DNA of 63,913 bases, the filler included, from Sluysia triapertura (taxonomy: Eukaryota): assembly GCA_046118255.1 (NCBI GenBank). It is 5 parts of 5 records of this genome, joined end to end, with 100 filler letters (N's around TTAATTAATTAA, not from the genome) between each part and the next. Parts side by side here need not be neighbours in the genome. Positions count along the whole stretch, not along the records: positions 52,061 to 63,913 come from JBJNIA010163593.1; 4 more parts are not named here. One strand, written 5' to 3'. Shown one piece after another: positions 52,061 to 63,913 of this stretch; position 1 is the stretch's first letter; every line of letters starts with the position of its first letter. The notes under the pieces were generated by a model. It ran no database searches and was not told the DNA's origin. It saw only the letters and a program-made list of their open reading frames with translations. The translations under genes and the position numbers were made by a program.

Positions 52061-52136
<76 letters not shown>
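51891..52136. other. (ATT)n / gap with linker (51961-52060) / (AAT)n
   Basis: Direct reading. Confidence 0.95.
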
Positions 52137-52137
<1 letters not shown>

Positions 52138-53295
52138 TTTATGGATATATTACTTATTAATACCTCTACCCAAATAGTTTAATTATTTTTTAAATCTTAT
52201 TAATGATCTTTTACATGAGCAAATTGACATCAGGCCAGACAATTCTTTTTTGTGTTGAAAAATTCATTATTTTTGGAAAATATCAAAAAATGTAACTATC
52301 CAAATAATATAATTGCATTTAAAAAATTTTGGCTATAATATTTAATATATAACATATTTAGCAAATTCTGTATTTGTGTTATTTATTAAGTTTTCATAAA
52401 TTCCAATATGTTCTAAGGCTGTCATGTCAAACTCGCGACCTTTTGACCAAAAATTTCTTGACAATTTATCTTAGTTGTACTGATAATTAACTTTTACAAA
52501 TCGATATCTATGTATTATAATAATAATATGTACTTCATATATACATAAAATATGTTTCAGTTAAAATTTTATTAAACTTAACATTTTCCAGAATTCTGTT
52601 TTTATTATTATTATTATAGAAATTAAATTTATTTATTATATGAATCTTGATTATATTTCACTTTGCATTTAGTGAAATATTATTGGTCCGGTAATGACTT
52701 TGTGTTAGACATAATTGGTCTAATGATTTCTTAAATGTTATGACTTATAAATAAATGGTGATCACAATCAAAAGGTTCCTTTTTAATATCAATCTACTCG
52801 AGTATCGATTATTTACAGTCGAATAATGTAAAAATTCAATATGTAATATGTTACTCGACTTTTAAAAATGTAATCAGAAATAATGAAATTCAGATAATGA
52901 AATTCAAAAAATTAGGTGTTGTAAATAAATGTGAAAATATGGATCTAGAGAAACGAACAAAATAAACAAGCAGATTGAAAACAGATAAATTTTCATTAAA
53001 ATGATCCGATGAAATTGTCTGTTTTCCGTTTCCTCGTTAGTTGGATTTACAATATTCGAATTATGTAAAACTTGGAAGAATTGAATGGCTTAAGAATATG
53101 TGACGATAGTTTTGAAGTGGGAAATAGTTATATTAGATAATTATGTGGTTTATTATTTCTTTTTAATGCTATTTTCACAATTTATAAATTCGTAAACAAA
53201 TTTAATTTTATAGTTCAATTTAATTTTATATAGATAATTACATTATAAAATTAAATTTGTTTACGAATTTATACATTTTGAAAATAAACAAATAA

Positions 53296-59394
<6,099 letters not shown>

Positions 59395-59490
59395 GTTTGT
59401 TCATAAATTTATATTATCAAAGATTATTGAAATTATAAATAAATTGAAATAAATCAAATTTTCATGTTAAAATTCAGATTCATTCTTATG

Positions 59491-59510
59491 CATTATTATT
59501 ATTACTATTA

Positions 59511-59567
<57 letters not shown>
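59491..59567. repeat. (ATT)n microsatellite
   Basis: Direct reading. Confidence 0.9.
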
Positions 59568-59570
<3 letters not shown>

Positions 59571-60032
59571 TGAATTTATTAAAACTTCATTGAGTATAAT
59601 TCAGTTATTGAATTTATCTTTTTCAATTTATACTCAAAATAATATTTTTTGAACATTTAAATTTGTCGTTTTAAATTTTTTTTGATATTAGACGCGCATA
59701 ACCTTTTTATAAAATAACTGAAATATTAATATTATTTTTATTTAAAAAAGGCAAATTTTGATTTTCTTTCGGTTTATTTTGTTTCATATTATGTTTTAAA
59801 TAAGAAATGTGTAGCGAATTAGTATAATTTTATTAAAAGAATAAAATATGTATTTTACTAAATCCAAATCTGATTAATAAATTGGAAAAAATTATACTTT
59901 ATATATTGCATTAAGAAATGCATAATTCTTGGTATTTGAAGATTACTAAAAATACTGAATACGAGATTTTGTCATTTATTTCAAGAGAGCTTACTTCATA
60001 GGAAAAGAGATTATTTTTATTGTTAATTTGAA

Positions 60033-60039
<7 letters not shown>

Positions 60040-60090
<51 letters not shown>
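60040..60090. repeat. (TA)n(TG)n compound microsatellite
   Basis: Direct reading. Confidence 0.9.
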
Positions 60091-60398
60091 TTATATGTGT
60101 ATATTGTATTTCAGCGTGAAGAATCATAAAGAATATCCTTTTTAATATTGGTTTGGTCTACGAGTACTTTGCCATATTTGAACATTTTTATTAAATTTAA
60201 TTGTTTTAATAAATAATTGCTAGTTTTGTTTTGAAAACAAGTTTGGCAGTACTCGAGTTATGTTTAAAGAAGTAAAATTTCAAAATTTTATAAATGTGAA
60301 CAAATTTTTACATGAAAGTAATGATTTTCGGCATAAGTGTTTATAAGTATAAATTTGCATTTGAAGATTTTCAATAAATAAATTCAATTTTTAATTAC

Positions 60399-61456
60399 TG
60401 TTGGGATTCACAAGTGCTTGTTAGGTAATTAGGGAGAAACATGTGGAGCTGTAAAATGAAGAAAGAACTGGTATAAATTTGTGGATTGAACATTATAAAC
60501 ATTGTCGAAGAAAGAATCATGAAAATAAAAACAATTATAATAATGATAACAGTAGAAAAATACCTTGACATTCCAAAGAACTATATAAGGTGTGGAGACT
60601 TTTTTGAGGCTTGAAGTCTACCTGAAAAACCCTTTGAAGTTATTATAACACCTTTGAGCGTGTTAATTTTGAAATAATCTAAGACTATTAACTTTTAAGT
60701 GTTCTGGAAATCTTGATAAGCACTAGGGATCATCGAGTAATATTATAAAGTGTAAGTCTTCGAAATATTTGAGAAATAAAATCATTGTTCAAAATAATAA
60801 AGATAAATTTAATATAGTAACAATTAACGTAAAAATTAGAAAAAGGAATCAGAGAGGTGCATGTGAAAATACCTAGGACCTCCTGAATACCTTATAAATT
60901 ACTAAATAGTGTTGGAATCTTAATACAACCTTTAAACATAAAATGAAGTAATTAATTAAAATCTTAATTAAGTAAAAGTACGTTTTTGTGAATAAATTTT
61001 GAATGGAGAATTCTATGTTAAATTTGAAACTGTGTATGTATTTGTTTTGAAAAGACCTTTTGATGAAGGTATGGTTTGACCGTGTTCATGCAAGGAAAGC
61101 CTTAATATTGAGCAAAGTCAAATTTTAATTAATTTTTAATTATAGAATGTTGAATTTTTGATACTTAGAGTGATGCAAATGTGATGAATGGAATGAAGTG
61201 ATGGCTATGAAAGAGGAGAATCTGTAAGTGAGTTCGAAACGTTTATAGAATGGTTTGTTTGAGAATAAGAACCTTAAAACATTTTTTCATTAGAAAATTT
61301 AGTGTGAAAAATTGAAAATCAATTAAATCCTAAAAGGTGAAATTAAATTCATTATTTTTATTTATGTTAATAATATTGTTGATTGTTATTTTAATGAGAA
61401 AAGTAATTTAAGTAAAAATAGATTGAATAGAGTAAAAGGAAATTATGGTTGATCTA
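60399..61456 (+). mobile_element. LTR-like repeat family B, near full length
   Basis: tgttgggatt...ggttgatcta; homologous to 16111-16610 and, inverted, to 35141-36043. Confidence 0.75.
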
Positions 61457-62785
61457 TATGTTCTGTACTTGTGTGGAGGGCAATATGTATTTTAATTTAT
61501 GAAATTTAAATTTAACTTTATTTTTATGTTTATTAAAATTTATTTTTAACAAATAAATTACAATTAAACTAACAGGATTAAAACACATTAATCTTTTATT
61601 TACAAACATGGGCTTAAGGCCCGAAACAATTAAAAATGAAAACACAATTAAAAACAAACAATTAATTATTAAATTTAACAAACTGACAAAGTTTGCCAAA
61701 AGAAAAAAATTAACAATCATACAACGATATAATAAATACGTAGAATAAAATTTGATGAAAATAACCGGTCCAATAGTAAAAGGTGGTTTTGAAACGTAAT
61801 TGTTGAATTCGTAGAGACACCTTGCTGGTTTCACGATTGAAATATTCACATTACCACAATTAATGCATGAATAGTTGATCAGTTTTACGTTATCAAGCAA
61901 CATTTTGTTATTAACGTTAATTTTTTTTGGTGATGTTTAAGTGACACTTTTAAATGAGACGTAACGCCAATTTTTAGTTAAAACTTTTATCGTAATAACC
62001 GGCAAATTACGTTGTACTGGTTTGCATTTATCGAGCACTGAACATTTAACTTGTCTACTACCATAATTACTTCCACATTTCACACTATCATCAGTAATGT
62101 CCAAATTACCTGCACGATAGCACGGATTTGAAATAAAACAACAATAATTTGTTAATTCCAAAGTGTCCTTATTAAAGGGAGTTTCTTGTATATTGTCCAC
62201 TGTACATTTTATATCAGGAAAGAGGCGTTCATGGAAGATTGTAAGTAATGTTAACATTAACAACGTATTATCGATTAACATTTTTTATTATTTAATTTTT
62301 ATTATTTTTATTAATCATAATATAAAATCAAATAAATTCATTATTGCAACAGCATTATTTATATATACAATGGTTTTGTTAATTGTTAAAATAACAATAA
62401 TGAATGTCAAGTCAAATATTTCCTGTTCCCCATTGTATTCATAAGTTCTTTGACATCATCTAGCCAATATAAAGTGTGATTGTACAGTGAAATAAAAAAG
62501 AAATGTTTCAAAGATTTAACGAAATGTCGAAATGACAAACTCTATATTGATAATATAATATAATTTTTTTACTGTATTTGTTATTAAAGTTTCAAGAAAG
62601 TGTACATTTGTCAAGCATAAATTGGAAGATTCTTCAAATTAATAGTGATTACAAGAAATTAATACTTGAATCATTGTTTCAGAAATATATTTAACTGAAT
62701 ACATTTTAAATTCTGGTATAATAATAACAATAATTATGATTATGATAATAAATATAATGTCATCAAATAATTTCATCACTGACAT
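61454..62785 (-). pseudogene. Decayed ~444-codon membrane glycoprotein-like (env-like) ORF
   Basis: ATG at 62785 and ORFs 61937-62281 and 61454-61903 share one frame (offsets 504 and 378 nt) with about 7 internal stops. N-terminal hydrophobic run, Cys-rich middle with NxS/T sequons (NYS, NIS, NKT), C-terminal hydrophobic helix and basic tail. Confidence 0.55.
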
Positions 62786-62849
62786 GTAAGAAATTGTGTT
62801 ATACCCTAATAAAATTTATGATTTTTTTCCAATATTTTATAAACTCATT

Positions 62850-63913
62850 TTAATCACATCGTTCTATTTTGGCCACAATTTTTCCTTCCCATAATGGCAA
62901 GATACTGTCATCTTTTGTGATCTCTTCGTGAATTAAACCACAATCGAATTCATCCGAGTAACGTTTGAAGAAATAGCGAAAAATTCCTTTCATGGCAACA
63001 ATATTTTTGAACTGAGCCCATGTTAGCAATTAACATGTTAACAATTAACATGTTAACAATTATCAGTTCCATTTTCTATTGGCACTTGAGTTCTGTAAGG
63101 CACCGGGTCGTTTCCCATATAGTAACCAATCACCAAATTACTATTAGATATGGAAGATTGAATTTGATTGGTTGCATTTTCATGATTTTGATTAGGTTCT
63201 AATTTAACTGGTACTGATGCCGTCGAAGTACGTTGTAAATTCGAATAAGAAATACGTGGTGGTATCTGAGGTGTATTCGGATGAATTGTCACAGTTGATT
63301 GGTTAGGATCAAACATGGGATGGCTTGGATTGAAAACTTCGGCTTCTTCTTCAATATTTTGATTGCAAGAACTCCATTCTGGATGTTTAATGATCCATCG
63401 ATGTACTTTATCATCTAATTGACTTTGTCTCTGACCAACATACTCATAAGCTGAACTGACACCTGAGTCAATGTAACTGGAACTTCCTGAAACTATATTT
63501 GGTTTTGCTTGAAGAAATCTATTAGAATCAGTTCAATTTTGTCATTCAAAATTTCATTTTCGGTCTTTATTGATTCATTTTTTTAGTTCCATATTGTGCA
63601 ATTTCCTCTGTAATGAATCTTTTTCTAATTCCAATTCTTCAATCATATTTTGATTATCATCTGTTTCCTTTTTTTTTGTAGACATTTATCTTCCAAGTAT
63701 TTGTTTTTGGACGTCAAATTATCTATTTCTGTTTTCGCTTCGTCTAATTCATTAATGTAATAATTCAAATTCTTTTTCAATTCATCAGCCTGAGCTACTA
63801 ATTCATCGTTTTTGTCACGAAGAGCTTTCAACTCCGACCTGTCATCCTTTTTTAATTTCAATAATTCAATTTCATCAAGTGCCTCCTCCAATTCTTGTGT
63901 TCGAACAGCAAGT
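62850..63913 (-). pseudogene. Intronless coiled-coil::Axin C-terminus/DIX-domain fusion gene, frameshifted; runs off the window end
   Basis: DIX: LVIGYYMGNDPVPYRTQVP...(63136) and LTWAQFKNIVAMKGIFRYFFKRYSDEFDCGLIHEEITKDDSILPLWEGKIVAKIERCD* (to 62850), matching Axin VxYYFCGEPIPYRT...TLGQFK...KGxYRYYFKKxSDEFDCGxVFEEV..D..VLPxFExKIxGKVExVD. Upstream in frame: SYIDSGVSSAY, KVHRWII, PSHPMFDP...PNT. Further upstream, a heptad-rich coiled coil. Confidence 0.88.

What the first reader, a model, noticed from the sequence alone, without database searches (positions are those of the whole stretch)
62850..63913. Captured, intronless Axin C-terminus (DIX domain) fused to a foreign coiled coil: a candidate mobile-element-borne Wnt-pathway modulator
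Seen: the ORF track splits it, but 63532-63053 and 63029-62850 on the minus strand encode a clear Axin-type DIX domain (YFFKRYSDEFDCG, LPLWEGKIVAKIE). It is preceded by segments resembling conserved Axin boxes (KVHRWII cf. Axin1 KIMQWII; PSHPMFDP...PNT cf. PxHPFxQDP...PNT). Upstream, where Axin has its GSK3- and beta-catenin-binding region, there is instead a >100-aa coiled coil (LEEALDEIELLKLKK...). There are no introns, although nearby host genes are intron-rich. Known: DIX domains polymerise head-to-tail with Axin/Dishevelled, and DIX fragments lacking effector sites can disturb the destruction complex. Inference: a processed Axin mRNA piece was captured and fused by a large retroelement or endogenous virus, giving a possible dominant-acting Wnt/beta-catenin regulator. 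This copy is disabled by homopolymer frameshifts and a tandem duplication.
Basis: partly seen in the sequence, partly recalled or inferred. Interest (0 to 1): 0.9.

Follow-up and report, generated by a model that had tools for sequence, protein, structure and literature searches.

The report
Broken flatworm Axin gene tail
This is the 3' end of an ordinary chromosomal Axin-family (Wnt-pathway scaffold) gene of a flatworm-type genome, with an unusual helical segment before its Axin tail and a reading frame broken four times, and nothing links it to a virus or mobile element.

Summary
On the minus strand of 62850-63913 lies an Axin-type DIX domain: Pfam DIX E 6.8e-18, and solved-structure scores of 67.7 bits for Axin-1, 41 for Dixin and 27 for Dishevelled. 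An Axin-specific box precedes it, and before that a segment of about 120 residues predicted as one long helix. The frame changes four times, and a short tandem array sits inside the DIX-coding part.

The interpretation does not hold. The nearest relative is Schmidtea mediterranea Axin B, with 71-73% identity in the DIX domain and a colinear match over its last 280 residues. All close database hits are flatworm Axins. The piece 52061-63913 holds no LTR, reverse transcriptase or other element gene; it holds Misshapen/MAP4K4 kinase exons on the other strand.

The missing introns are not diagnostic, because the host Axin of Macrostomum lignano also encodes this whole region in one exon. The gene runs off the piece at 63913, so an RGS/GSK3/beta-catenin part further upstream cannot be excluded.

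My preferred reading is a host Axin duplicate or divergent paralog that is decaying. The main rival is a working gene with assembly indel errors.

Interest is low to moderate.

The parts
62850..63913 (-). 3' portion of an Axin-family gene, cut off upstream by the piece's edge. It is broken as it stands: four changes of reading frame and one short tandem array in the DIX-coding part. Its stop codon is at the low end.
62853..63142 (-). DIX domain of Axin type, in two frames
   Evidence: Pfam DIX. Solved-structure scores: Axin-1 67.7 bits, Dixin 41, Dvl 27. Identity to Schmidtea Axin B 71-73%. The window keeps 14 of the 16 columns that are at least 90% conserved in 130 Axins.
63383..63490 (-). 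Axin C-terminal box (S-rich run, DSG-S, then a K-V..W motif), shared with planarian, millipede, squid and brachiopod Axins
63545..63913 (-). Helical, coiled-coil-like segment (approximate bounds) with no detectable relative. Its frame is open at the piece's edge. It lies in a different frame from the Axin-like part.
53296..53545 (+). Neighbour: exon of a Misshapen/MAP4K4/TNIK-family kinase (kinase domain; approximate bounds)
   Evidence: Pfam Pkinase. Solved structures: MINK1 E 2.8e-37, chain residues 189-268.
58681..58803 (+). Neighbour: next exon of the same kinase, the end of the kinase domain (approximate bounds)
   Evidence: Solved structures: TNIK/MAP4K4 E 2e-9, chain residues 277-314
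58890..59410 (+). Neighbour: Pro/His-rich exon following the kinase domain (approximate bounds). No CNH-domain exon follows before 63913.

Best explanation
The locus is the last, intronless stretch of a chromosomal Axin-family gene of a free-living-flatworm-type, AT-rich genome. It descends from the lineage's own Axin and is nearest to planarian Axin B. It lies antisense to a Misshapen/MAP4K4 kinase gene, probably inside one of that gene's introns.

Shown: the Axin box, the linker and the DIX domain are colinear with Axin B.

Inferred: before it broke, the product would have joined Axin/Dishevelled assemblies by head-to-tail DIX polymerisation, and the long helix would have added self-association.

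As the sequence stands, four frame changes and a tandem array inside DIX prevent any DIX-bearing protein. I therefore read it as a decaying duplicate or divergent paralog, that is, a pseudogene. It may be a 5'-truncated or chimeric copy whose Axin homology starts right at the junction with the helical segment. It is not cargo of a mobile element or virus.
For: - Axin type of the DIX domain.
- The ten best of the hits to the DIX piece are Axins, with RGS and/or beta-catenin motif plus DIX (or, for fragments, DIX alone), and come from Schistosoma, Taenia, Trichobilharzia, Calicophoron, Echinostoma and others.
- The best relative is Schmidtea Axin B. tblastn gives three colinear matches, Axin B residues 497-573, 638-716 and 724-778, over window 63505-62853. 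Axin A matches too, at E 3e-14.
- No element features in the piece.
- Ordinary neighbour gene with a 5.1-kb intron.
- Breaks are specific to this gene. There are four in about 1060 bases, against none in about 880 coding bases of the kinase exons.
- At least one break lies in a tandem array whose copies differ from each other. That is not what a simple homopolymer miscall looks like.
- Relatives have no intron at that loop.
Against: - No in-frame stop lies within any of the five pieces, although 5.8% of single-base changes would create one.
- 14 of 16 highly conserved DIX columns are kept. Any decay is therefore very recent, or the breaks are assembly errors.
- Two of the four frame changes coincide with the only two A-runs of 7 or more bases in the gene. 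Long-read consensus errors concentrate at such runs.
- No poly(A) remnant follows the stop, so a retrocopy origin is unproven.
- The parent gene, the copy number and the upstream part could not be seen.
Confidence: 0.6

Rival explanations
1. A working Axin-family gene whose frame changes are indel errors of a long-read assembly. It would be either the species' ordinary Axin B orthologue with a lineage-specific helical insert in its linker (RGS, GSK3 and beta-catenin parts lying beyond 63913), or a new paralog in which a coiled coil replaces the scaffold part.
For: - The five pieces are free of stops, and the DIX and box residues are well kept.
- Two breaks fall at the two longest A-runs.
- An intronless last exon of 1.39 kb is normal for a free-living flatworm Axin.
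- The frame is open at the piece's edge.
- The DIX loop that holds the array carries insertions of tens of residues in several trematode and monogenean Axins.
Against: - The kinase exons show no break in about 880 bases.
- One break is in neither a homopolymer nor a repeat.
- The tandem array puts stops into both the incoming and the outgoing frame.
- None of the roughly 70 long Axins screened has a comparable helix before the box, and only one reaches the crude coiled-coil score anywhere, at another site.
- No protein or contig with these exact ORFs is on record.
Confidence: 0.3
2. One reading: a processed Axin mRNA piece captured by a large retroelement or endogenous virus and fused to a foreign coiled coil, acting as a mobile Wnt-pathway modulator.
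For: - The conserved intron inside DIX of Taenia and Schistosoma Axins is absent here.
- Axin homology begins right at the junction with an unrelated helical segment.
- The locus is antisense in or beside another gene.
- One tapeworm gene model (P0061) joins an Axin DIX to a reverse transcriptase domain. That looks like an element sitting in the DIX intron and merged into the gene model.
Against: - There are no LTRs, reverse transcriptase, integrase, gag or viral ORFs anywhere in 52061-63913.
- There is no poly(A) tail remnant.
- The intronless state is shared with a bona fide host Axin.
- The DIX is of the host lineage's own type.
Confidence: 0.03
3. An orthologue of DIXDC1/Ccd1 (Dixin), the known coiled-coil-DIX host protein.
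For: A coiled-coil-like helix is followed by a C-terminal DIX domain. The W-E-G-K-I-V-A stretch at the end of DIX also occurs in zebrafish Dixin-A.
Against: - DIX scores 67.7 bits to Axin-1 against 35-41 bits to Dixins.
- That same stretch (with V/I and K/R swaps) is common to flatworm Axins.
- The Axin-specific box and linker are present.
- All nearest database proteins are Axins.
Confidence: 0.02

Closest known systems
Schmidtea mediterranea Axis inhibition protein B (UniProt G3C7W9, P0175)
   Same: The DIX C-part is 71-73% identical and the N-part about 85%. The second DSG-S box and the pre-DIX linker are colinear, at 37-50% identity.
   Different: Axin B has the beta-catenin core 142 residues, and a first DSG box 100 residues, before the second box. 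The window has a long helix there instead. The window's linker is shorter and its frame is broken. Its N-terminus (RGS) is unseen. Its DIX is as far from Axin B as tapeworm DIX domains are, so it is an old paralog or belongs to a distant flatworm.
Axin family in general (RGS, GSK3 helix, beta-catenin motif, C-terminal DIX)
   Same: C-terminal DIX of Axin type, with the conserved C-terminal box in the same order.
   Different: None of the scaffold motifs occurs in the visible 147 codons before the box.
DIXDC1 / Ccd1 (Dixin)
   Same: The architecture of a coiled coil followed by DIX. By established knowledge of Dixin, a coiled coil next to DIX would raise avidity in DIX polymers.
   Different: The DIX and its flanks are Axin-derived. 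At most this is a convergent look-alike.
Processed pseudogene (5'-truncated retrocopy)
   Same: Intronless, with a broken frame, antisense in or beside a host gene, and homology to the parent family starting abruptly.
   Different: No poly(A) remnant; target-site duplications and the parent gene cannot be tested; a host Axin (Macrostomum) is equally intronless there.

Membership tests
Axin | C-terminal DIX domain closer to Axin than to Dixin or Dishevelled | tested here: met
Axin | Axin-specific conserved box between the beta-catenin motif and DIX | tested here: met
   Support is weak once the motif letters themselves are removed.
Axin | Beta-catenin-binding motif (Pfam PF08833) and GSK3-binding helix | tested here: inconclusive
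   Not found in the visible pieces. By the spacing seen in planarian Axins, the motif would fall at or beyond the piece's edge.
Axin | N-terminal RGS domain | not testable with these tools
   It lies upstream of 63913, outside the piece, which is masked on purpose.
DIXDC1/Ccd1 (Dixin) | DIX domain groups with Dixin | tested here: not met
   41 bits against 67.7 for Axin-1. The top database hits checked are all Axins.
DIXDC1/Ccd1 (Dixin) | Coiled coil directly before DIX; calponin-homology domain at the N-terminus | tested here: inconclusive
   A helix is present, but about 145 Axin-like residues separate it from DIX. A CH domain cannot be seen.
LTR retroelement / endogenous virus cargo | LTRs or gag, pol, reverse transcriptase, integrase or viral genes flanking the cargo | tested here: not met
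   within 52061-63913 only
Processed retrocopy | Lack of the parent's introns | tested here: inconclusive
   The intron inside DIX of Taenia and Schistosoma is absent here, but it is also absent in the Macrostomum host Axin.
Processed retrocopy | Poly(A) remnant and target-site duplications | tested here: inconclusive
   No clear A-tract follows the stop in AT-rich DNA. The 5' end is outside the piece.

The most novel reading that the evidence does not exclude
The frame changes are assembly errors, and the locus encodes a flatworm-specific Axin paralog. In this paralog a long coiled coil has replaced the RGS/GSK3/beta-catenin scaffold, leaving only the Axin C-terminal box and DIX. That would be a convergent counterpart of Dixin/Ccd1, able to tune Axin-Dishevelled polymers in an animal group where Wnt gradients set the body axis.
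Probability: 0.12. Interest if true: 0.6.

Novelty: new member of a known kind. Interest (0 to 1): 0.25.

Why it matters
If it is only a decaying or misassembled Axin copy, it matters little beyond annotation: flatworm Axins are already known to be duplicated and highly divergent (PMC12582415, citing Montagne et al. 2019). It would matter more if reads and transcripts showed an intact helix-plus-Axin-tail protein. That would be a new architecture in the DIX-polymer system of flatworms, where beta-catenin signalling controls head-tail polarity. The claim that made the finding exciting, a mobile-element-borne Wnt modulator, has no support.

Tried and rejected
- The pre-DIX piece gave no hit among proteins of 87-278 residues and no relative in metagenome contigs.
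- Exact look-ups of four ORFs of the piece found nothing on record, so the organism was not identified.
- The helical pieces matched none of the 218 fetched Axin-family proteins, no solved structure and no Pfam family above its cut-off.
- A broad profile of the 330 residues before DIX in 48 Axins was too noisy: 4.9 bits, with 78 of 2000 shuffles reaching it.
- I rejected an intron as the explanation of the break in the DIX loop, because relatives share no intron there, and I picked no stretch to bridge it.
- The bacterial-type promoter and terminator scan is irrelevant to this eukaryotic DNA.
- The 50%-representative search did not list Schmidtea Axin B, although it is in the 90% collection. 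Absence from that list is therefore no proof of absence.
- Literature searches found only two planarian axins and no coiled-coil Axin.

Full report
**Setting.** Only 52061-63913 is real sequence. It is AT-rich (GC 17-37% in 500-base windows), has no N and is eukaryotic.

- The plus strand carries three exons of a Misshapen/MAP4K4/TNIK-family kinase. The first hits Pfam Pkinase and MINK1 at E 2.8e-37 over chain residues 189-268.
- The second exon hits TNIK/MAP4K4 over chain residues 277-314. A Pro/His-rich exon follows. A 5.1-kb intron separates the first two exons.
- Kinases of this family end in a CNH domain (established knowledge). No such exon lies before 63913. The finding's gene, on the other strand, therefore probably sits inside a downstream intron of the kinase gene. 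This is an inference.

- I searched the minus-strand coding content as five single-frame pieces, each by reference and never joined.
- The last piece is the C-terminal two thirds of a DIX domain (Pfam E 6.8e-18). The end of the piece before it is the first third.
- Against solved structures the C-part scores 67.7 bits to Axin-1, 41 to Dixin and 27 to Dishevelled.
- An exhaustive scan of 1.84 billion representatives gave 319 hits. The ten best are Axins, or fragments of them, with RGS and/or the beta-catenin motif. They come from Schistosoma, Taenia, Trichobilharzia, Calicophoron, Echinostoma, Protopolystoma and others.
- The window keeps 14 of the 16 columns that are at least 90% conserved in 130 Axin DIX C-parts.

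**Nearest relative.** A profile search with a tapeworm Axin plus the window's pre-DIX piece returned Schmidtea mediterranea Axin B.

- tblastn of Axin B against the piece gives three colinear matches: residues 497-573, 638-716 and 724-778, over window 63505-62853. Identity reaches 73% in DIX.
- Axin A matches too.
- A box profile scores 26.8 bits against at most 10.3 in shuffles. Without the motif letters the remainder is only weakly supported, at p about 0.03, though at the right position.
- The DIX is as far from Axin B as tapeworm DIX domains are. The gene is therefore an old paralog or belongs to a flatworm distant from Schmidtea. The organism could not be named.

**The helical segment.** The 89 residues at the piece's edge are predicted as one helix with mean pLDDT 92.7. 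They give only generic coiled-coil Pfam hits below the cut-offs.

- Nothing similar occurs in any of the 218 Axin-family proteins fetched, or in the Protein Data Bank.
- A crude heptad screen found a comparable stretch in only one of about 70 long Axins, at a different site.
- In Schmidtea Axins A and B, the beta-catenin core lies 131-142 residues, and a first DSG box about 95-100 residues, before the second box. In the window, the about 147 visible codons before the box hold neither.
But the frame is still open at 63913, and a longer linker would put the scaffold motifs beyond the edge.
- Axin homology starts almost exactly at the junction with the helix, and the two parts are in different frames. 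That they belong to one gene is likely but not shown.

**Breaks.** As it stands the gene has four changes of frame, no stop within any in-frame piece, and one 15-base tandem array (2.9 copies, 96% matches) inside the DIX-coding part. I give counts only.

- Two changes coincide with the only two A-runs of 7 or more bases in the gene.
- Relatives have no intron at the DIX loop that holds the array, so I treat it as a break, not an intron.
- For real lesions: about 880 coding bases of the neighbouring kinase have no break. If breaks fell evenly at this gene's rate (4 per 1060 bases), about 3.3 would be expected there, and the chance of none is about 0.04. The copies of the array also differ from each other.
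- For assembly error: there are no nonsense changes although 5.8% of single-base changes would make one, and the conserved residues are well kept.
- I put a decaying copy at about 0.6 and an intact gene with assembly errors at about 0.3.

**Introns.** Taenia solium and Schistosoma mekongi Axins have an intron inside DIX and others upstream (loci L001 and L002). Many exon-sized database fragments start at that same point. The window is continuous there. But Macrostomum lignano Axin encodes residues 311-774 in one exon (L003). An intronless 1.06-kb tail is therefore normal for a free-living flatworm Axin and is no evidence of a processed mRNA. No poly(A) remnant follows the stop.

**Mobile element or virus.** In 52061-63913 there are only microsatellite-type repeats and two small local repeats. 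No Pfam element domain occurs in the ORFs, and a reverse-transcriptase query finds nothing. There is no tRNA or Rfam family. The idea is not supported.

**Comparison and verdict.** It works like, and descends from, Axin. Membership by DIX type and C-terminal box is met. RGS is untestable, and the beta-catenin and GSK3 motifs are inconclusive. It is not a Dixin. Two divergent Axin paralogs are known in flatworms (PMC12582415 and PMC13029709, citing Montagne et al. 2019). I found no description of a helix-bearing third one. Novelty: a new member of a known kind. Interest: 0.25.

- I joined neither the kinase exons nor the Axin pieces.
- I did not scan the viral-contig collection with the DIX piece.
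- I did not look up the same genome beyond 63913.

- In my reasoning I twice recalled approximate letters of Axin/Dishevelled DIX and of a MAP4K4 segment from memory.

Noticed in passing
window 61937-62281 (-) and the start of 61454-61903 (-): An ORF of 114 residues with a hydrophobic N-terminus and many cysteines, on a small GC island. It may be a small secreted Cys-rich protein gene lying between the kinase exons and the Axin-like gene. Pfam finds nothing.
   Followed up: partly
window 53170-53220 / 53236-53286: A 51-base inverted repeat, 90% complementary, with a 15-base loop, just upstream of the kinase exon. It looks like a hairpin or a miniature element.
   Followed up: no
window 60061-61560: Strong excess of G over C on the plus strand (skew 0.4-0.5) in non-coding DNA. 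Unexplained.
   Followed up: no
window 56914-56955 / 57148-57189: A 42-base direct repeat, 93% identical, with copies 234 bases apart, inside the large kinase intron.
   Followed up: no
P0061 (Spirometra erinaceieuropaei gene model): The model has the Axin beta-catenin motif plus DIX, but the end of DIX is replaced by an RVT_1 reverse transcriptase domain. It looks like a retroelement in the conserved DIX intron that was merged into the gene model.
   Followed up: partly
L003 (Macrostomum lignano) versus L001 (Taenia solium) and L002 (Schistosoma mekongi): The intron inside the Axin DIX domain is kept in the two parasitic flatworms but absent in the free-living Macrostomum, whose last exon covers 464 residues.
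   Followed up: yes
P0001, P0005, P0006 and other trematode and monogenean Axins: Low-complexity inserts of about 33 to 150 residues sit in the same DIX loop that holds the window's tandem array. This loop tolerates length change in flatworm Axins.
   Followed up: partly
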